From contig CATNEN010000007.1 in assembly GCA_950097015.1 (NCBI GenBank), positions 2,728,001 to 2,792,000 of the forward strand: a stretch of 64,000 nucleotides of DNA, given 5' to 3'. Source of the DNA: Macrostomum hystrix. Taxonomy: Eukaryota > Animalia > Platyhelminthes. Position numbers and translations under genes: made by a program. The notes under the pieces were generated by a model. That model ran no database searches and had not been told where the DNA came from. It saw nothing but the letters and a program-made list of their open reading frames with translations. Below are positions 12,117 through 24,261 of the stretch, in pieces (the stretch's first letter is position 1; every line of letters starts with the position of its first letter).

Positions 12117-15100
12117 ATGACTACGACACCTGCGTCGCAGCTCGCGGACCTAGCAGCATTCAACGGGCATTTGCTGATGAGGTGCGCCCACCTGAGAAAT
12201 CAAAAAGATCCTAAAGACGTCCTGTCGATGTATCGCTACTTCGAGTGCTTGAACGCCACCGAGGTGATGAAAATGTTTCACCAGCAACTGAGCCAGGTGC
12301 AGGACGAGTTAAACAAAGCCTTTCCCTTCCTGCTGGCCATGACCTGCATTCAGGTGCTGCTCATTGTCTTTGGCATCGCTGGCAATCTCTTTCTACTCAT
12401 CGCGGCCGCTCGCTGCCGCGCCTTGAAGAAGCAAAGAATCTGCTTTGTGATTAACCTGGCCGTGTCCGACCTGATCCTGTGCGTGTTCACCCAGCCCTTC
12501 AACATCATCAGGCTGATGCAGCGCTACGGCAGCTGGGATTGGGGCGTGCCGCTCTGCAAGCTGGTGTCCAGCCTCACCGGTGTCAACCTGTTCGCTTCCA
12601 CCTTCTCTGTTGTTGCCATCGCCCTGGACAGAATGCAGGTGAGAAAGCTTACGCGCCAGTTTATCTGGGGAAATTCCTGCATTGGCTGTTTGTCGCATAG
12701 TTTTTGGTGATAATCTCAATAGTCTTATAGCAATGGTGTGTACTTTTCGAGATTACGGCTGGTTCTTTGATAATGATTCGCTCTCGTATCTTCAGAAATG
12801 TTTGGCGTTTGTTTGAAATGTTTTATTTTTCTTCTAAACGGCTCTCGTTTCTTAAAGTTTTTCTCGTTTCTTAGAAATGGGTTCCGTTTCTTGGAGAGGG
12901 CTCCCGTTTCTTTGAAACAGTTCTCGTTTCTTGGAAACAGTTCTCGATTCTTTGAAACGGTTCTCGTTTCTTGTAAGTGGTTCTCGTTTCTTGTAAATGG
13001 TTCTCGTTTCTTGTAAGTGGTTCTCGCTTCTTGTAAGTGGTTCTCGTTTCTTGTAAGTGGTTCTCGTTTCTTGTAAGTGGTTCTCGTTTCTTGTAAGTGG
13101 TTCTCGTTTCTTGTAAGTGGTTCTCGTTTCTTGTAAGTGGTTCTCGTTTCTTGTAAGTGGTTCTCGTTTCTTGTAAGTGGTTCTCGTTTCTTGTAAGTGG
13201 TTCTCGTTTCTTGTAAGTGGTTCTCGTTTCTTGTAAGTGCATGGTTCTCGTTTCTTGTAAGTGGTTCTCGTTACTTGGAAACGGTTTCAGTTTTTTGTGT
13301 TGATGGGGTTTCCTTTGTAATGATTGGCGCTTCTTGGAAACTTGCCCAGTTTCATCGGTTATAATGGGCGTTGCTTTCGTAATTGTGGGTCTAAACTTTT
13401 GAAGGTATTTTTTCTTGAATCATCCACTGGTGCCTCAAACATTCGCACTATTTCTTCACAAACTTTTCAATCGGTCTTCCACATCCCAGTGTCTCCTCAC
13501 AGGACTAACCCAATCAATATTTGAATTCAATAACCGTACGCACAGATTTTCAGGCCTAAAATGTCTATGATTTTCAATTGGGTCACGCCCAGGATGTTTA
13601 CTAACTGGCTGGGGGGCCTGGACCAGATTCGGCCGAAATCCAATATCCCCTCTGCTGGGCGTCACAGAAGGAGGAAATGAAAGGTCTCATTTGGCTCGAG
13701 TTGTGTCTCGTCTGCCACTTTCTTCGCTGCTTGCAAAAAAGGCTGCGATTGGGTTGGATGAATTTCCCCAGGGGATGAACTGAGGGCATGGGATGAGGAT
13801 GCTAGTGAGATGGGATTTCAGTCTGCTCAGCCGCACGATGAGGCAATGATTTATTTTCTCTGGTGGCTTGAATTCCTCAAGATTTGAAGTGTTCGATGAG
13901 GGAACAGGCCGCAGGTGGTTGGATGGCGATTTCGAAGTGTCTGCGGCTTGAGAATGGTCTCAAAAATGGATGTTCATAATTTATTGGGGTCTGACAGAAT
14001 CTGGGTTGTGCTCGATAAATACTTGACTAGACAGCATATGCTCAGGACTACTGTATACTCAGGACTGTATGCTCAGGACTACTGTATACTCAGGACTGTA
14101 TGCTCAGGACTACTGTATACTCAGGACTGTATGCTCAGGACTACTGTATACTCAGGACTGTATGCTCAGGACTGTATACTCAGGACTACTGTATACTCAG
14201 GACTGTATGCTCAGGACTGTATACTCGGGTTTACTCTGTTTCGAATCAAAAAACATATTCAAGCACTAAATATATTAAAGGCATTACATATGAAACTTTG
14301 AACAAATGAATTACGAGCATCTGTATCACTCTAAACTAGCGTTGCAATTCTCCTAATTGCAATGTGCAGTCGTTTCTTCTGAGTGATTCAACACTTTGAC
14401 CACAAAGGATCGCGGACTTAAGCAGAGGTAGCAGATGAGGCCGAGGCTTACGAGACGTATGTGTCAGTTTTAGCGGGCCAGTGTGCCAAGGTTTGATTAC
14501 CAAGAAATGTGGCCCTCTTTCACTTTTTTTCTCTTAGTTTTACAACTGCTCGCTCGATTGGCTTTCTTGATGTGCTCAGCGATGTTCTCAATGCTCAAAT
14601 ATGTTTCTACTTACTAGCTTTGAATTTTATCCAATGGTCGCTATGTTCGTTTCGTAATATCAAAATTGATTGTTAAGCTGAGAGTTAAGATCTGCAGTAA
14701 GATCATATTGAATATTGCAATCGGTCAATTCCTTCGACATTCTCAAGGCATTTATAGGGCTTTGTACCCCAAGTGTTACTACAAGGACAGCTCGAAATTC
14801 AGATGAAATTAGATGACAAACAAGGAACAAATTTTCCTGAGGACACTGTTCAAAGTATACCCGCCCGTCTTCCAGCTGACTCTGCGTCCTTCCAAGCAGC
14901 CGCTTTCGCCACTGAAAATCGGCCTCAGTGTCACAGCCATCTGGCTGATCTCCTGCCTGCTCGCCAGTCCGCTGCTCTTCTTCGCTGGCGTCGTGGAGGA
15001 CACGGTCAGGTGGGACCGCAAGCACTACCTGTGCGGCGAGGACTACCTTCACCACGGTCAATGGCTGAAGGCTGCCAAGCTGCTGTATAGTGCCGCCACG

Positions 15101-16023
15101 ATCCTGGTCCAGTACCTGGTGCCTCTGGTCATCATCAGCTTCGCGTATGTCAGCATCTACTGCCGCCTGCGCCGACGACCAGTCAACCAGCAGCAGCAGC
15201 AGCCTTTGCCTGTCCCGGCTGTTCAACTACAGTGGACGGCAGAGCAGAGACATCTGGAGCGAGCGAAGCGAAGAAGACAATTCAGGACCAACTGCTTGCT
15301 GGGAGCTGTGGCTGTCGGCTTCGCTCTGGCTTGGCTGCCGCTGACAATGTCCAATCTGGTGCAGGACTATCAGGTAGGCAGTGGGTTTGATTATTCAATT
15401 ATAGAGATTGTGAGGTGTAGGCTAGGATTCGAAGTTAAAAATTCGACTGAGCTGCGCAAAATCCACAGGACTGGCGCCGTAGACAACCCTTAGCCGCCAG
15501 CTCGACATCAAAGTCTGCTCGATCGGCAGCCTCGAGTGGTCACGGTGGAGGAGACAGCGGCGAAAGCGGTGGCGTCGGGGGGATGAGCATTGGCGTCAGC
15601 GCCTTCTTTCACAGCCTCTGCCTGACGCTAATCCTCATGTCCACCTGCATGAACGCCGTCATCTACGGCTTCTTTAACAGCAAGCTGAAGGGACAGTACA
15701 GCGACTTGCTGTGCCGTTGCTTTTGTCGTTCAAGCGAGCATTCCGGGCGTCAGGCTGGTGGCGGAGCCCAAAACAACGATGCCAGAGTCAAGAGCGGCGC
15801 TTACAAGGCGGCAAAGAAAAAGTGCGCTTCAACAGCCGATGCCGAGCGCCAGCCTCTGGGACGGCGCAGGTCCTGGCAGCAGTCGGCGAACTCCATCGAT
15901 CTGCAATGGAGCGCTATTCTCAAAGCCGAAGAGCTGGCTCTGCGCAGCGAGTGTCTGCCCTTAATGACGACGACGACCCGCTGCCAGCTGGCGCAAAACG
16001 ACACGGAGAATAAAGACGTCTGA
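12117..16023 (+). CDS. Class A neuropeptide GPCR, NPY/NPF-receptor-like; join(12117..12638,14876..15373,15469..16023), 524 aa
   Basis: TM1 GIAGNLF, TM2 INLAVSDL, ECL1 WDWGVPLCKL, TM3 IALDRMQ, TM4 IWLISCLLASP, TM5 VQYLVPLVIISFAY, TM6 FALAWLP, TM7 STCMNAVIYGFFN. All junctions are GT-AG and phase 0. The exon 3 acceptor (15468) is the least certain. Confidence 0.88.
12835..13290. repeat. 20-bp minisatellite (GGTTCTCGTTTCTTGTAAGT) in GPCR intron 1
   Basis: Near-perfect at 12960-13270, degenerate on the left. Confidence 0.93.
14035..14228. repeat. 14/17-bp compound repeat (CTCAGGACTGTATG / CTCAGGACTACTGTATA) in GPCR intron 1
   Basis: Read directly. Confidence 0.9.
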
Positions 16024-19000
16024 CCGGCCTTCGACCAAGTTATCGGCCCTGGACTGAAAAAATTCATTCAACTTGTGTTAAGTCTTCAATTTTAAAGCCA
16101 TATAAGGATGAAGGATTATTGTGGAATCAATTCAACAGTAGAAAGACGACGGAGGTTTTTAAATACCCACATTTTTCTTTTTTCTGTATCCTAAAATTTT
16201 CAACCAATTTAGCCCAGAAAACGGGCTAAAATTTTTTGCTTTATCCGATTAAACAATTTTCTGAATCACAAAACATCGCGGCATTGTCGATATATTCAAC
16301 GATTCGCGTCGGCGTGTCAATTGGCAAAATTTCATCATGCAATCATATCGGCTATCGTATATTGTTGACTATTTTGCTAATTTTTTCACTTTTAAACCAA
16401 TATATGGATTCGCCAAAAAGGTTTTTGCAGAGAAATGTTAGTTGTCCTTCTCAGCAGGGACTGCGACAAGGATCCCTGAATATCTCACCGATGCTGACTT
16501 GGACTGCATTGGAAGTTACACCATCATAAAAAACGGAAAATTTAGATTCAGATGGTGGAATTTCACGAAACTCGGTCATTCGGTTTGGGAGCAGCAGTGA
16601 AGTGGGCAGTGGGTATTTGAATTCATTTGTCTTTCCTCAGGGAGAAAATAGCGCGATCTTTCTACTGTTAAGAGATTCGACATCATCCTATAAGCCCAGT
16701 TGTTTTTGAGTTATCTAAATCTCCAGTTTTGCAAGGGAATCCACGAAAAGCACAATTGGATGAATTCCGAATATCTCGTGTACCATTCTTGTGGAAGACG
16801 TAAAGTAAACTTGTTTTTTCGCCTATTCCCATTTCCCATCATACAAAAATGCTGTTGCGTATATAGTGTACATTATGTCAAGTGTCATGTAAAATATTTT
16901 ACTAACAAACCAATTTTTATCGATGCATTCCACGGAGATTAAAGTTTCTAATTTGATTCACACCATCATACTAACTCTACAGTTCTCGATAACGTTATTG
17001 CTATTAGTTTTTTGGGCTGTCGCGAGCTATAAAAAGCGACATTTTTCTAAAATTCACCTTAAAAATGCCTAAGCAATAACTTAGGTATTGCTTACCTAAT
17101 ACATAATGCCTAATTAGGTATTTTGGATATTATTCTATATAACTATATTCTATAATATATTTTAGATATATTATATTCATACTATTATTTAGGTATTATT
17201 AATGGGCTCATGAAGGCCCATGAAACTTGAGCTGACGTATGAACCACGGGGATGCTAAGTGGCGGCCGACCTTGTCGCCAGGTTGACTTTTTGGTAGGAA
17301 AAACGATGGGATTATATATATATATATATATATATGTTAGAAATCACGCATCACGCACATGAACCGTCATGGTAAGTCTCCTTAAGCCCAGCCGGGACCC
17401 TGTCGCTGTGACTGTTCAACCGAGCCCTACCGTCTTGTGATTGGCCCGACGTTGTACATACAGTAAGCTTGAGGAAGGTGAGAAGGGTGGCATTACATAA
17501 TTGTTTGCGTAATATGTTCATTAATTATGCATTCGCTCAACAATTACATACATTTCTGAACTACTTAAAATATTCATTTTGAAGATTTAGTTCAGTATAG
17601 ATTAAGTATTACTGCAATTCGATAATCTCATGAACGAAATCATATATTTTTAAGAAATCAAGTTGGCAGCAAAATTTCGAGAAAAGTACTAGACCTAGAC
17701 AAGACAAGCAAACTTTTTAAGAAGCTTATTTATTGATATGGTTCAAAACGAGACAGCTGTTTAATGTCAAGGACCACTAGGAGAATATTACTCCTATCCC
17801 AACTTCTTCCAATTGGTCCTTGATGTAAGCATCACAAAAACTTGTGTTAGTTTTGAGATTATGCAATTATGCATTATGCAATGTGCTTTTGTAGGTTGTC
17901 AGCTGCGACCCGACTAAGTCCAATATCACATGTGTTCAGACCGTCCACCGACTAAATGATAAAGCAAATCACAGCAATACAGGCAATTTATAGTCCGAAG
18001 TTGTATTGAAGATAATGAACAAGAACTTATATTGTTATAAAATCGATTACATGCAGTGAATTATTCCAAGACCTCTTTGAAATTATTAGACATTTGGCTT
18101 CAGTTCCCTTTCGGCTCCAACAAGTTGGTTCGCCGTATTTTAGCAAACTGTTTTTGCGAGTTTATTAATTAATCTAATTTACGCCCTCTTCCTTAAACCC
18201 GTATTTTTTTCAGTTAAAATCGAGAAATAGATTCATAAACTAGAGCTTCAACATTAAAATTTCTAAAAAGGTAGCTGAACGATTTGATTTACTTTGAAAG
18301 TCAACAAAACATATAGTTAAACCCGGAATAATTGCGTCGCGCTGATTCAAGATTCACAGACTCTACATTATAACTGTATAATACTAGTAAAGCCTTGAAA
18401 TACTGTAACTTTTTTAATGACCTATAACTTCGACTTATGTCGACTAGAATTGGCTCAACAGGCTACTTGCCTGCGCCAACTATTACAACTATGTCTATTT
18501 CTTACTATATTCAATTTATATTATTCTTTTCATAGAACACTCTTGTGTCTAATAGTAATACTGCATATTGTAGCTTTTATAAATGTTATATAAACTATTT
18601 AATGATTAAAAAACTACATTTTGTTCCTTTTTGTTGTAATTTGTTGTCCTTATGTTGTAATGAGAAGAGTTAGGTCACTCTTAGTTTGTTGAGTAGGCCC
18701 TAGTCCCTAGAGTGTAGACATTTTGGCTATCCAATAGCTATAGAACTGTTCGTTTAATTAATTTTCTGCCTAAATTCGATTCTTTTATATTTGCTGAGGT
18801 AAAAATATGAAACACATGAAAGAATTAACAGTTTAACACACATGGGGCATTTTTACTATTATCTCTTTTTTAATCTATTTTTAATCTCTTTTTACATTAT
18901 CTCTACGGACTAGACTATACAAAAATACAATAGGTGAATAGCTGTCTGGGTTATACTAACAAAATTACAAAATCTTTGTGAAACTTGCATCTCTTGTCTA

Positions 19001-20557
19001 GCCCATAAATAAATAAAAAATGTAGCTGTTAGTTAAATTAACAATAACATAAGCTTCATTACAAGAATATAGTTGTTGCTGTCATTTATCATCATTGTCA
19101 TGTTTATTATTCTGGTATAAAGGTATTTACAAAATCCTTTAAAGGTCAGTAATCTTCAGACAGTCCTTTGACTTTTTTGAAGTTTAATCCATATTATTGG
19201 TTATTATCTTACAAAAAATACTATACAAAAAATTGCTTCTAAAATCCTTAATTCCTTATCTCCCACTAAGTATGGTCATCCTGTGACATGGAAGCCATTC
19301 CATAGAAAGTAGTTGTAGATGTCAGAACAAATGGTTTTCTTTTTTAAAATCAGCATTCTAAAAACCCCTATGTCCTAGTCTAGACCATGTAGTGTTTCTG
19401 GCATGTATTTGCTTTGGACTGTCATACATGGCATCCATTGGAATATATTTCAATTTCAAGGGGTTGGTATGCACCATGGTGTGCATGGCCAGCATTCATG
19501 AATCAAAAAAAGAGATAAAAATATGTTTCGCATAGGGCCTATATATGTATTATTTATATCCAATTGTTGTGAATCGTAAAAAAATAGCAGTAAAAATATA
19601 AAACCCACAAAAACTATATTAGTAACATACAATAGTGCTCTATCAACTAATTAGAATGGACTTTGCATGACTACAACATAAGTTTTGTTAGCTGTCAATA
19701 ATTTTTCTATTTTTGTAAATTGGACTATTGATACTTGAAGTCAATTAATTTTTATATGCTCCATTGCTCTAAGCTAAATAATGGGTAAAATATATGACAT
19801 ATTTACAATTTACAATTATCAGGTTTATCAGTGTTACTGCTAAGTGTTCAATTTGATCATTGCGAACATACTAACCAAGCAGTTAAGTGCAAGCAACACA
19901 GCCATGAGCTGGAATTGAAAAAATGAAAAAAAAAACAATTATAATGTAAAATAGTTTTTGTATACTTAAAAAAGTATCATCAATGCTCTTGATGTATTGT
20001 TTTTATTTCACTCTTTTTCACGTCTTCAATTGAAAAAATTAGAGATGTTTAAAAAATGTTGCATAGGTAAAAGTTAAATAGTTATATTTTTATAAAGTTG
20101 ATGTGTATCAACTTATGTATGCTATAGCATATATTTTATGATATAGTGGTTGTTCTATAAGTTAGTTTATATATATTTATTTACAATATTATTTTTGTTT
20201 CACGTATTTAAATATTTATTGCCAATTTTTATGTCTTAAAAGACAATATTTTTTGAGAATTTGTTAGGTTAAAATATATTATTTATATATAAAAATTGTC
20301 TTTTTAATGTTAGAATAAAATAGGACTCTGAGCTTATTTAAAGAGGCAATAGAGGGCCTAGTGGCAAGGAGGTGAAACTTCTCTCTCTCTCTATGAAAGA
20401 TAAAGATTTATTTTTCATGCACTGCACTGTTATGCAGTTATGCACTGATGAAGTATTTCAATAGACAAGTAAGGATATAGTTATTTCTGGTTTTATATAT
20501 AATCTCACACTAGGCTATAGAAGGCTTTATACCATTAGGAGTTTAAATTGATTTCAG

Positions 20558-21563
20558 CAGCCAGTCCAAGCCACAGTGACTCATTGTGCCGCTACTGGCC
20601 AATTTCTTATTTGGGATGCCGGCTCCGCGCAGCGCCTGCGGCTCAGCCGCTTCATCGCCGCTCCGATTGGCACTCTTCCAAGATGCCCCCGTCAGAACCG
20701 AGCCCTGTACCTGCCCTGCATGCTGGCACCCGAGCAGGCGGTTGTGGCAGCGGATGTTCTCTCGGGTGTTGAGTTTGTCAGTCAGGCAGCTTGTCCGGCC
20801 TCCGTTGAGTCAGGCGTCATCGCCGAGTACAATCGCCAGCTAGAGACCAACTATTCCGAGGCAGTCGAGGTTCTGCTGGCTCGCCGCAGACTCCGCATGA
20901 CGCCGCACACGGCTGCCATTGCGGCTGGACGGGCAGCCAAGAGACGCCGACTGAGGCGCCTGAACGAGTCGGAATCAGAAGCTAGCTCAAAGGTTCAGCA
21001 ATGTTCCAGCCAGGAATCGAATCTAGTTGAACAACAACAAGGCGAAGAAAATGAAGGAGTCGACCTGGCTGCCGAAGCGCTAGCCGAAGGCCTGCCGCCG
21101 CCTGATCGAGTTGCCATTCATTTGCCGACTCGAACCCCGGACCACTGGCTAAGAGCCGGCGAACAGCTGGGCCTGTCGGAGTTCCCGTCTAGTCCAGCAT
21201 TGTTCGACACACCGCGCAGTCGGCTTCGATTATCAGTTTGGCGTCACCTGTGGCACCTGGGCTACTACCTGACTGGCGGTGCTGCCAACTTCGGTGCCGA
21301 CTATCTCCTTTATCAGGGCGAGCCTCTGCGCTATCACGCCACACACTTGGTGCTGTGCCGTCCGGAGGGAACTCTGCCGCCGCCTCGATGTTTAACCTGT
21401 CATCTTAGGCTGGCCAATGACGCCAAAAAACTGCTTCTAGTGGCAACGCCTTCCACAGGGTCGGATGCCGGGGTCGACTGTCGGGTATTTGCCTGGAGGC
21501 GCGGCGAGGCCGTGGAGATGCGACTGGGTAGCGAGGAGGAGCGCAACTGCCTTGACGCTATGG

Positions 21564-21601
<38 letters not shown>

Positions 21602-21658
21602 ACTACTGGAGCTGCTAGTTGCCGCGAAACAGAAGCAGACTTTGAAGAAGATATTTGA
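20558..21658 (+). CDS. TSEN34: tRNA-splicing endonuclease subunit Sen34; single coding exon with no genomic ATG for the N-terminus
   Basis: FLIWDAGSAQRLR...IGTLPRCPRQN..L.LPCML matches the TSEN34 N-terminus. RLSVWRHLWHLGYYLT...FGADYLLYQGEPLRYHATH...AKKLLLV matches the catalytic domain, with the Tyr/His/Lys triad intact. The frame is closed upstream by TGA at 20549-20551, and a TTTCAG acceptor ends at 20557. Confidence 0.92.
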
Positions 21659-21679
21659 CCAACGCTCAATGTTTAGTCT

Positions 21680-22235
21680 TTTCCACCTCTATCAACCCTC
21701 TCTTCCAACCTCTATCAACCCTCTCTTCCAACCTCTATCAACCCTCTCTTCCAACCTCTATCAACCCTCTCTTTTACCCTCTATTAACCCTCTCTTCCAC
21801 CCTCTATCAACCCTCTCTTCGACCCTCTATCAACCCTCACTTCCACACTATCAACCCTCTATTCCACCCTCTATCAACCCTCTCTTCGACCCTCTATCAA
21901 CCCTCTCTTCCAACCTCTATCAACCCTCTCTTCCAACCTCTATCAACCCTCTCTTCCAACCTCTATCAACCCTCTCTTCCAACCTCTATCAACCCTCTCT
22001 TCCAACCTCTATCAACCCTCTCTTCCACCCTCTATCAACCCTCTCTTCCAACCTCTATCAACCCTCTCTTCCAACCTCTATCAACCCTCTCTTTTACCCT
22101 CTATTAACCCTCTCTTCCACCCTCTATCAACCCTCTCTTCGACCCTCTATCAACCCTCTCTTCGACCCTCTATCAACCCTCTCTTCGACCCTCTATCAAC
22201 CCTCTCTTCCACCCTCTATCAACCCTCTCTTCCCT
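21680..22235. repeat. 23-bp pyrimidine-rich minisatellite (CTCTATCAACCCTCTCTTCCAAC) just 3' of the TSEN34 stop
   Basis: About 24 units, period 23. Confidence 0.95.
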
Positions 22236-22512: not shown

Positions 22513-24261
22513 ATGGCCACCAATTTGACATCGGCCACCGGCCTGCCGCCTGGCTGGAAGCGGGAGGAATCGCTGAAGCAGTCGGGATTATCCTCCGGAA
22601 AGACCGAAGTCTATTACGTTAGTCCTGGTGGGCGAAAGCTGAAAAATCGAAATGAACTTCAGCGGGCACTCGGCGATCGGTACGACCTGACTAACTTCGA
22701 CTGGCGCAGCGGCAGATTCATGCCGTACGCCAGGCCCCAGCAACAGCAGCAGCATCACCATCACCACCATCATCAGCATCTTCAGCACCAGTCTGTGGCT
22801 TCTAATAATGCTTCAGCTGCCGCTGCTGCCAGACTGAAAACGCCAGCCGATATGCTGTCATCAGCCGCCGCCGCCGCCGCGGCTGCCAGCGCCTCGTCTG
22901 CGCAGCGATCGTCTGGTGCTTCAACAGCTGGCGGAGCTGGCACAGCCGGCTCTGCGGCCAGGGCCACCACCGATCCTTCGCTGAGGCTGCCCGTCAGGCA
23001 GACTGCTTCCATGCTCAAACAGTCGGTAGGTTGATCCCTGTTGTTGACGTGGCTTTTACAGATCGTTCTCTTAGCTTGGGTCTCAGCCTGACTCCTGAAT
23101 CTCACAGCCTGACTCTTTCAGCCTGAATCTCTCAGCCTGAATCTCTCAGCCTGAATCTCTCAGCCTGAATCTCTCAGTCTGAATCTCTCAGCCTGAATCT
23201 CTCAGCCTGAATCTCTCAGCCTGAATCTCTCAGTCTGAATCTCTCAGCCTGAATCTCACAGCCTGAATCTCTCAGCCTGAATCTCTCAGCCTGAATCTCT
23301 CAGCCTGAATCTCTCAGCCTGAATCTCTCAGCCTGAATCTCACAGCATGACTCTCATTGCCTGACTCCGCCTGAATCTCACAGCAAGAATCTCACAGCAT
23401 GACTCTCATTGCCTGACTCCGCCTGAATCTCTCAGCCTGAATCTCTCAGCCTGAATCTCTCAGCCTGAATCTCTCAGCCTGAATCTCTCAGCCTGAATCT
23501 CACAGCATGACTCTCATTGCCTGACTCCGTCTGAATCTCTCAGCCTGACTCAGTCTGAATCTCACAGCACGAATCTCACAGCATGAATCTCACAGCATGA
23601 CTCCGCCTGAATCTCTCAGCCTGACTCAGCCTGAATCTCTCAGCCTGTATCTCACAGCATGACTCTCGTTGTCTGACTCTCATTGCCTGAATCTCTCATC
23701 CTGAATCTCACAGGCTGAAAGTCACAGCGCAACTCCTATTCTTAACTAACTTGACTTCAACAAAAATTTACCCATCTACTTCACCTGCCGTCGCAGGTTG
23801 AGCTGGTCCGCAGCCACCCGGACAGCCGGCGCAACGACCTGCAGCACGGCCCTAAGGAGCGGCCCCGTCAGCTGTTTTATCACAAGCGCTTCGAGGGCTT
23901 GCGCGCCTGCAATCCGGATACCGGCGAGCCACGGCCTGAGGTCGGCCTGCCGAAGCACCTCCTGCCTGCAGCCGGCGGCCCCGTGACAGGCTCCGATCAG
24001 CTGGTGCTCAGCATCGCCGACTGCCTGAGCAGCGTCAGCGGCGGCACCTCGGGCGCCATGGCTGTTGTAGGCCAGCAGAATAGCAAAGCCTTCGAAAAGA
24101 ATCCCCACGTTGCTGTGAACCCGGACCAGCCGTTGGTTCGCTACCATCTGGTCACTGACGATGAAGTTCGTCAGCAGGAGGCTGTTGTCCGCGAGGCCAG
24201 GCGGAGGCTGGCTCTGGCGCTGCGCCTCTTCAAGGCGGGCAGGGAGGCGTCCGCGGCTTGA
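22513..24261 (+). CDS. MBD2/3: Methyl-CpG-binding domain protein 2/3 (NuRD subunit); join(22513..23025,23797..24261), 325 aa
   Basis: MBD: LPPGWKREE...SGLSSGKTEVYYVSPGGRK...FDWRSG. Also LPVRQTAS.LKQ, PRQLFYHKR..GL, and the C-terminal EKNP...NPDQPL...VTDDEVRQQE coiled coil. The intron is GT-AG, phase 0. Confidence 0.95.
23085..23725. repeat. 14-bp minisatellite (CCTGAATCTCTCAG) filling the MBD2/3 intron
   Basis: Period 14 measured. Confidence 0.93.

What the first reader, a model, noticed from the sequence alone, without database searches (positions are those of the whole stretch)
20549..20640. TSEN34 appears to get its start codon from the spliced leader
Seen: the frame is closed by TGA at 20549-20551 and has no ATG until well inside the conserved region (LPCMLAP). 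A TTGATTTCAG acceptor ends at 20557 exactly in phase 0, so AUG+CAG CCA GTC... gives MQPVQATVTHCAATGQFLIW. This puts the conserved Trp at a distance similar to vertebrate TSEN34 (MLVVEVANGRSLVW). About 4 kb of AT-rich sequence upstream shows no obvious coding exon. Established: flatworm spliced leaders end in AUG, and that AUG can initiate translation. Inference: an essential tRNA-splicing enzyme that depends on trans-splicing for translation, and that standard gene finders would truncate.
Basis: partly seen in the sequence, partly recalled or inferred. Interest (0 to 1): 0.78.

Follow-up and report, generated by a model that had tools for sequence, protein, structure and literature searches.

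The report
Flatworm TSEN34 borrows leader start codon
The only tRNA-splicing endonuclease (TSEN34) gene of the flatworm Macrostomum hystrix has no usable start codon of its own and most likely takes it from the AUG that ends the trans-spliced leader, a mechanism already known in flatworms, so this is a good but ordinary example.

Summary
A single-exon TSEN34 orthologue lies at 20558-21655 (+). Its frame is closed by TGA at 20549-51. It begins in phase 0 right after the acceptor TTGATTTCAG, which ends at 20557. The first in-frame ATG is at 20720 (codon 55), after two out-of-frame ATGs.

The genome is the published M. hystrix assembly. Its spliced-leader RNA genes end in ...TTGCATG|GTAAG.

Contigs from three public runs that behave like RNA cover the exon and nothing in the roughly 450 bases upstream.
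- Two contigs stop matching the genome exactly at the acceptor. They still match the G at 20557 and carry 22 further non-genomic letters.
- The third contig starts at 20560.
- This is what a partner ending in G, such as the leader's AUG, would give.
- The 22 letters were not printed, so the leader itself was not seen.

All three M. lignano copies of the gene are annotated "partial". One begins exactly at the homologous in-phase acceptor.

It ends in A, which does not fit the contigs.

Leader-donated AUGs have been established in flatworms since 2006, and this scan has noted them elsewhere in this genome. Verdict: new member of a known kind. Confidence about 0.75, interest low.

The parts
20548..20557 (+). 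trans-splice acceptor TTGATTTCAG; TTTCAG fits the M. lignano SL-acceptor motif [T/C]TNCAG
   Evidence: Sequence. Motif from PMC8629364. The X3 and X5 contigs stop matching the genome here.
20549..20551 (+). in-frame TGA that closes the TSEN34 frame 2 codons before the acceptor
20558..21655 (+). TSEN34 coding exon (366 codons, no ATG of its own before codon 55); stop TGA at 21656-21658
   Evidence: It is a single copy in the genome.
20558..20560 (+). second CAG: possible alternative acceptor (NAGNAG), also in phase, which would give M-P-V instead of M-Q-P-V
   Evidence: Sequence. The X4 contig starts at 20560. That the acceptor is used is an inference.
20616..20618 (+). first genomic ATG of the mRNA, out of frame (+1), opens a 75-codon ORF
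20683..20685 (+). second genomic ATG, out of frame (+2)
20720..20722 (+). first in-frame genomic ATG (codon 55, LPCMLAP); this Met is Ala in M. lignano
21224..21460 (+). catalytic C-terminal domain of the tRNA intron endonuclease (residues 223-301); Tyr, His and Lys align with those of human TSEN34
20448..20468 (+). rival: candidate cis mini-exon ATGAAGTATTTCAATAGACAA followed by donor GTAAGG (20469-20474), with an 89-nt intron to the same acceptor
   Evidence: It is disfavoured because it ends in A while the contigs match G at 20557, and there is no RNA depth here.
20453..20472 (+). short block conserved with M. lignano at the same distance from the acceptor; the reading frame is not conserved, so it is probably regulatory (promoter or outron element)

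Best explanation
The gene is transcribed from a promoter in the AT-rich flank, possibly near the conserved block about 90-105 nt upstream. The short 5' stretch (outron) is removed when the 43-nt spliced leader is trans-spliced onto the acceptor ending at 20557, and perhaps also the one ending at 20560. The leader ends in AUG. Joined in phase 0 to CAG CCA GTC..., that AUG becomes the initiator codon of a 367-residue TSEN34 (M-QPVQATVTHCAATGQFLIW...) behind a 40-nt leader with no other AUG. Without the leader the mRNA has no in-frame AUG before codon 55, and a scanning ribosome would first meet two out-of-frame AUGs. Shown: the sequence anatomy, the TSEN34 identity, the leader genes ending in AUG|GTAAG, and RNA-like contigs that end their genomic match at the acceptor. 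Inferred: that the 22 extra letters are the leader, and that translation starts at its AUG.
For: Anatomy.
TSEN34 identity, with the N-terminal 54 residues aligned to human residues 6-50 including LPRxPRQN.
Single copy in the genome, so this gene must supply the enzyme.
Leader: the 35-nt M. lignano SL (PMC8629364) occurs exactly in tandem arrays of the own genome and is followed by GTAAGA. It is identical to the published M. hystrix SL (PMC10468722 Suppl. Table S3). There is no SL copy in the window.
RNA:
- The X3 and X5 contigs of 1057 nt lie on 20557-21557 with 22 unaligned letters before 20557. No mismatch is listed at 20557.
- The X4 contig starts at 20560.
- Depth is 0 across 20112-20503.
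- No joint is reported into 15800-20556.
- A partner ending in G (...AUG) explains both the match at 20557 and, with NAGNAG use, the break at 20560.
- An overhang of 23 leader letters is near what a k=31 assembler should keep if another SL-mRNA shares the first 7 exon letters (my estimate; inference).
M. lignano: the three homeologues are all 'partial'. P0003 starts at the first base after an AG (L012:3001). It has the same 19 codons to the Trp, with synonymous differences in those codons. The annotation pipeline cuts transcripts at SL-read peaks (PMC5730564).
Precedent: more than 40 S. mansoni cDNAs need the SL AUG (Cheng 2006, as cited in PMC9851317).
Against: The 22 loose letters were not displayed (table 7 was truncated), so the leader was not read on this transcript. 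The runs are of unrecorded kind; that they are RNA is inferred from the coverage pattern. Contigs cannot show minor isoforms. An in-phase ATG plus a good donor lies within 200 nt upstream of the acceptor in both species. By shuffles this is about a 6-10% event in one species and 4-12% in the other, so a cis-spliced alternative may exist. The AUG context in the leader (U at -3) is not strong. Only one of the three M. lignano annotations starts exactly at the in-phase acceptor.
Confidence: 0.75

Rival explanations
1. A cis-spliced 21-nt mini-exon (20448-20468, ATG AAG TAT TTC AAT AGA CAA | GTAAGG) supplies the start codon through an 89-nt intron to the same acceptor. The protein would begin MKYFNRQ-QPVQ...
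For: The exon has an in-phase ATG, no stop and a consensus donor. Only 6-10% of shuffles of the 200-nt flank contain such a candidate. M. lignano has its own ATG|GTAA(G/A)T 77 nt upstream of its acceptor. Sharing of acceptors between cis- and trans-splicing is reported for parasitic flatworms (PMC12582326).
Against: The mini-exon ends in A, but both contigs match the genomic G at 20557 and no mismatch is listed there. The X4 contig breaks at 20560, not 20561. Depth is 0 over 20308-20503 and no joint 20468>20558 is reported. The contigs hold only 22 letters, which would leave a leader of about 1 nt before that ATG. Neither the donor nor the frame is conserved in M. lignano, which has CAA-TAA and a one-base indel giving TAG. 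None of the three M. lignano annotations includes an upstream exon.
Confidence: 0.1
2. Another upstream cis exon ending in G supplies the ATG. Examples are ATG|GTAAGT at 17369-17376, or an exon beyond the 5.9 kb that was laid.
For: ATG|GTAAGT at 17369 is in phase and ends in G. A 22-letter piece may be too short for the read tool to place as a joint.
Against: There is no RNA depth anywhere in 16780-19900. About one such candidate is expected by chance in 4.3 kb. No similarity to the M. lignano flank was found there. A first exon represented by exactly 22 letters in two runs would be odd.
Confidence: 0.07
3. Translation starts inside the exon, either at the near-cognate GTG at 20576 or at the first in-frame ATG at 20720, and the leader or 5' end is only untranslated.
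For: GTG at 20576 has A at -3 and would keep the conserved Trp at a human-like distance. ATG 20720 is what a gene finder would pick.
Against: GTG is GTC and the Met at 20720 is Ala in M. lignano. Two out-of-frame ATGs precede 20720. A start at 20720 removes 54 residues that align with human TSEN34 residues 6-50. Codons 1-6 show synonymous conservation between the species.
Confidence: 0.05

Closest known systems
Leader-donated initiator AUG in flatworms (Cheng, Cohen, Ndegwa & Davis 2006, J Biol Chem 281:733; 'slORFs', PMC9851317)
   Same: The leader ends in AUG. The acceptor is in phase 0 with an ORF that lacks its own start. The conserved N-terminus begins right after the junction.
   Different: Here it is a free-living macrostomid and a particular housekeeping gene. 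Translation from the leader AUG was not tested here. In S. mansoni it was tested experimentally (per the citing papers).
M. lignano TSEN34 homeologues PAA71616.1, PAA78630.1, PAA82273.1 (Mlig008060.g1, Mlig033256.g1, Mlig028031.g1)
   Same: They are single-exon orthologues, 58-72% identical over the two aligned blocks. None has a start codon ('partial'). The frame is closed by TGA upstream, and a phase-0 AG sits at the same codon, 19 codons before the Trp.
   Different: The acceptor is AAG rather than CAG. The Met at codon 55 is absent. They carry an inserted repeat (EAKPEVEGNQ...) in the acidic linker. There are three copies because of polyploidy.
Human TSEN34 (PDB 8iss_C, 8hmz_B, 7uxa_A)
   Same: Same two-domain layout. 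The LPRxPRQN motif and the catalytic Tyr/His/Lys columns are conserved. E = 1.7e-31 over residues 11-300.
   Different: Human TSEN34 has its own AUG in an ordinary cis-spliced gene. The worm N-terminus is 5-6 residues longer.

Membership tests
TSEN34 (catalytic subunit of the eukaryotic tRNA-splicing endonuclease) | C-terminal tRNA intron endonuclease catalytic domain (PF01974) | tested here: met
   43.6 bits against a cut-off of 27, residues 223-301.
TSEN34 (catalytic subunit of the eukaryotic tRNA-splicing endonuclease) | Catalytic Tyr-His-Lys triad | tested here: met
   alignment: LLYqGePLRyHA and daKKLLL align with human LVYpGdPLRfHA and vrKTLLL. That these residues are the triad rests on my knowledge of the family.
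TSEN34 (catalytic subunit of the eukaryotic tRNA-splicing endonuclease) | TSEN34-type N-terminal domain rather than Sen2 or archaeal EndA | tested here: met
   In one search the best hits are all TSEN34 chains, aligned from residue 11. PF26577 (TSEN34_N) is precomputed on the M. lignano orthologue.
mRNA with leader-donated initiator AUG | The organism's spliced leader ends in AUG directly before the donor | tested here: met
   ...TTGCATG|GTAAGA in tandem SL RNA genes; published M. hystrix SL.
mRNA with leader-donated initiator AUG | The leader is joined to this mRNA at an acceptor in phase 0 with the ORF | tested here: inconclusive
   contigs leave the genome at 20557 with 22 extra letters, with a G matched at 20557, no upstream depth and no cis joint. 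The letters themselves were not shown. Phase 0 is read from the sequence.
mRNA with leader-donated initiator AUG | No genomic in-frame AUG that could give the conserved N-terminus | tested here: met
   TGA at 20549; first in-frame ATG at codon 55, behind two out-of-frame ATGs. The cis mini-exon candidate is disfavoured.
mRNA with leader-donated initiator AUG | Translation starts at the leader AUG | not testable with these tools
   This needs ribosome profiling, N-terminal proteomics or reporter assays.

The most novel reading that the evidence does not exclude
TSEN34's reliance on the leader AUG is conserved between M. hystrix and M. lignano. At the same time, each species keeps a different in-phase 'ATG + donor' mini-exon within about 100 nt of the shared acceptor. 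The gene may therefore be supplied with its start codon either in cis or in trans, or it may have been caught while the leader replaces a decaying first exon.
Probability: 0.15. Interest if true: 0.5.

Novelty: new member of a known kind. Interest (0 to 1): 0.25.

Why it matters
This gives a correct gene model for the only TSEN34 gene of M. hystrix. Start-codon-based finders truncate such genes by 54 conserved residues or mark them 'partial', as happened for all three M. lignano copies. It is also a clean, conserved example for estimating how many flatworm genes depend on trans-splicing for translation. It does not change what is known about the mechanism.

Tried and rejected
- Two word-based protein searches found only the M. 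lignano cluster. They returned no transcript-derived protein with an N-terminal Met.
- Exact look-ups of the window's own products, from 20558 and from 20720, found nothing on record.
- Supplement searches for the three Mlig gene ids found nothing.
- No leader copy lies in the window that could act in cis.
- Low-stringency BLAST of the 4.5-kb flank against the three M. lignano flanks gave only AT-rich low-complexity hits upstream of the acceptor.
- The bacterial promoter/terminator scan is irrelevant to a eukaryote and was ignored.
- The cis mini-exon at 20448-20468, ATG|GTAAGT at 17369, the GTG at 20576 and the ATG at 20720 were considered and ranked as rivals.
- Small depth (3-4) in the bin 19916-20111 of all three runs was not resolved. 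The stretch holds an A-rich run, and short low-complexity matches at 88% likeness are the likely cause.
- The big representative search, structure prediction and complex prediction were not used, because the protein's identity was already clear.

Full report
**What is there.**
- TGA lies at 20549-20551, followed by TTT CAG.
- The acceptor-like string TTGATTTCAG ends at 20557.
- An open frame starts with CAG at 20558 and runs 366 codons to the TGA at 21656-21658.
- The only ATGs between 20558 and 20722 are 20616 (frame +1, 75-codon ORF), 20683 (frame +2) and 20720 (in frame, codon 55).
- A second CAG at 20558-20560 makes a NAGNAG pair whose two acceptors are both in phase.

**What the ORF encodes.** It is a TSEN34 orthologue.
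- Pfam PF01974 matches at 3.2e-11.
- Human TSEN34 chains match at 1e-31, aligned from query residue 11 to human residue 6. The LPRxPRQN motif and the Tyr/His/Lys columns of the active site are conserved.
- A start at codon 55 would therefore remove a conserved part of the N-terminal domain.
- The gene is single-copy in its genome.

**Whose genome.** The assembly has 220,453,370 bases in 42 contigs. This is exactly the Macrostomum hystrix assembly of Wiberg et al. 2023 (PMC10468722, Table 1).

**The leader.**
- The 35-nt M. lignano spliced leader (PMC8629364) occurs without mismatch in tandem arrays on three contigs of the genome.
- In two copies I read, it is preceded by GCCGTAAAGA and followed by the donor GTAAGA and a U-rich Sm-like site.
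- This equals the 43-nt M. hystrix leader assembled from transcriptomes (Suppl. Table S3 of PMC10468722).
- It ends in AUG and has no other AUG.
- No leader copy lies in the window.

**RNA evidence.** One read-laying run was allowed. I laid three runs of one 2020 study and one other run on 15800-21676.
- The kind of the runs is not on record. Their contigs cover the exon and nothing in 20112-20503 or 16780-19900, which is how RNA behaves.
- In X3 and X5 a 1057-nt contig lies on 20557-21557 with 22 further letters before 20557 that fit nothing in the stretch.
- No mismatch is listed at 20557, so the letter before the exon is G.
- In X4 the contig begins at 20560.
- No joint into the upstream 4.7 kb is reported.
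- A partner ending in G, as the leader's AUG does, explains the match at 20557. If both CAG acceptors are used, the two forms share the G at 20560 and diverge at 20559 (A versus U), which is where the X4 contig breaks.
- The length of the overhang (23 leader letters counting the G) is near what a k=31 assembler should retain when another leader-bearing mRNA shares the first seven exon letters. With about 7,000 trans-spliced genes that is likely. This point is my inference.
- The weakness is that the table of loose ends was truncated, so the 22 letters themselves were not shown. I could not reach them by another route.

**Comparison with M. lignano.**
- The only relatives found are three M. lignano homeologues. 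All are annotated 'partial', that is, without a start codon.
- In all three loci the frame is closed by TGA upstream. A phase-0 AG stands at the same codon as in the window, 19 codons before the conserved Trp.
- P0003 begins at the very first base after that AG (L012:3001).
- The M. lignano annotation cut transcripts at peaks of leader-containing reads and then ran TransDecoder (PMC5730564), so such a start is what a trimmed trans-spliced mRNA would give. The other two copies start a few codons further in, so this is supportive rather than decisive.
- Codon by codon, the first 20 codons show identical residues with third-position differences (GTG/GTC, TGT/TGC, GCT/GCC, TTT/TTC). This indicates coding constraint right up to the acceptor.
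- Similarity between the species begins at the acceptor.
- The Met at codon 55 is Ala in M. lignano, and the GTG at 20576 is GTC. Neither internal start is conserved.

Eighty-nine nt upstream lies ATGAAGTATTTCAATAGACAA|GTAAGG (20448-20468), an in-phase mini-exon with a consensus donor.
- M. lignano has its own ATG|GTAA(G/A)T 77 nt upstream of its acceptor.
- Such candidates occur in only 6-10% and 4-12% of shuffled flanks, so I took this seriously.
- Against it:
  - The window's mini-exon ends in A, which contradicts the G seen in two runs and the break at 20560 in the third.
  - There is no depth over it and no joint, and only 22 letters are present.
  - The two candidates are not homologous. 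The 16-nt block GTATTT(A)CAATAGACAA is conserved at the same distance from the acceptor (2 of 500 shuffles reach its score), but with a one-base indel that destroys the frame and without the donor G in M. lignano.
- The block therefore looks like a regulatory element (promoter or outron) rather than coding sequence.
- A minor cis-spliced isoform cannot be excluded with contigs.

**Mechanism and verdict.** Most likely (about 0.75) the pre-mRNA's short outron is replaced by the leader at 20558, and perhaps also at 20561. The leader's terminal AUG then starts translation of M-QPVQATV... behind a 40-nt leader. The anatomy, the leader genes and the contig boundaries are shown. The identity of the overhang and the use of the AUG are inferred.

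**How new it is.** That all flatworm leaders end in AUG, and that this AUG serves as initiator for a set of mRNAs, has been established since Cheng et al. 2006 (as cited in PMC9851317, and PMC12582326). The M. hystrix genome paper itself notes it. This scan has also flagged the same pattern at several other places of this genome. This is therefore a new, well-behaved member of a known kind. Its value is in gene-model correction, not in new biology.

Noticed in passing
window 20453-20472; L012:2892-2911: A 16-20-nt block, GTATTT(A)CAATAGACAA(G)TAA, is conserved between M. hystrix and M. lignano at the same distance (85-108 nt) upstream of the TSEN34 acceptor. Only 2 of 500 shuffles reach its score. 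It is TATA-like, so possibly a core promoter or outron element.
   Followed up: partly
window 20448-20474; L012:2921-2929; L001:5885-5893: Both species carry an in-phase ATG followed by a GTAAG-type donor within about 100 nt of the shared acceptor, but at non-homologous positions. They could be relics or alternatives of a first exon, or U1-binding sites in the outron.
   Followed up: partly
window 21677-22233: A 23-nt unit (TCTCTTCCAACCTCTATCAACCC) is repeated about 24 times, 93% alike, starting 19 nt after the TSEN34 stop. It lies in the 3' UTR or in the spacer before the MBD gene.
   Followed up: no
window 21566-21616: A (GCT)17 run encodes a poly-Ala tract near the TSEN34 C-terminus. The RNA contigs of all runs break here.
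   Followed up: no
window 16150-16650: Many high-depth contigs of all four runs, including the run of another labelled organism, match short pieces here at 88-95% and then run on unlike. This looks like a fragment of an expressed repeat or transposon family.
   Followed up: no
window 19916-20111: All three M. hystrix runs show a small depth (3-4) in this bin, which holds an A-rich run. The pieces were not listed. They are probably low-complexity matches, but this is unresolved.
   Followed up: no
window 14813-16023 and 22513-23031: The neighbours on the same strand are a rhodopsin-type GPCR (PF00001, 2.4e-18), ending about 4.5 kb upstream, and an MBD-domain gene (PF01429, 5.3e-14), starting about 850 nt downstream of TSEN34.
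   Followed up: partly
G000 contigs C15, C17, C42 (loci L006-L009): SL RNA genes stand in tandem arrays with a period of about 11.6 kb. Many degenerate leader copies ending in ATA or with internal changes are scattered elsewhere, including a roughly 927-nt tandem array on C39.
   Followed up: no
run X1 (organism A) on window 20873-21055: A 183-nt contig from a run labelled as another organism matches TSEN34 with one difference. This could be the same or a very close species, or carry-over between samples.
   Followed up: no
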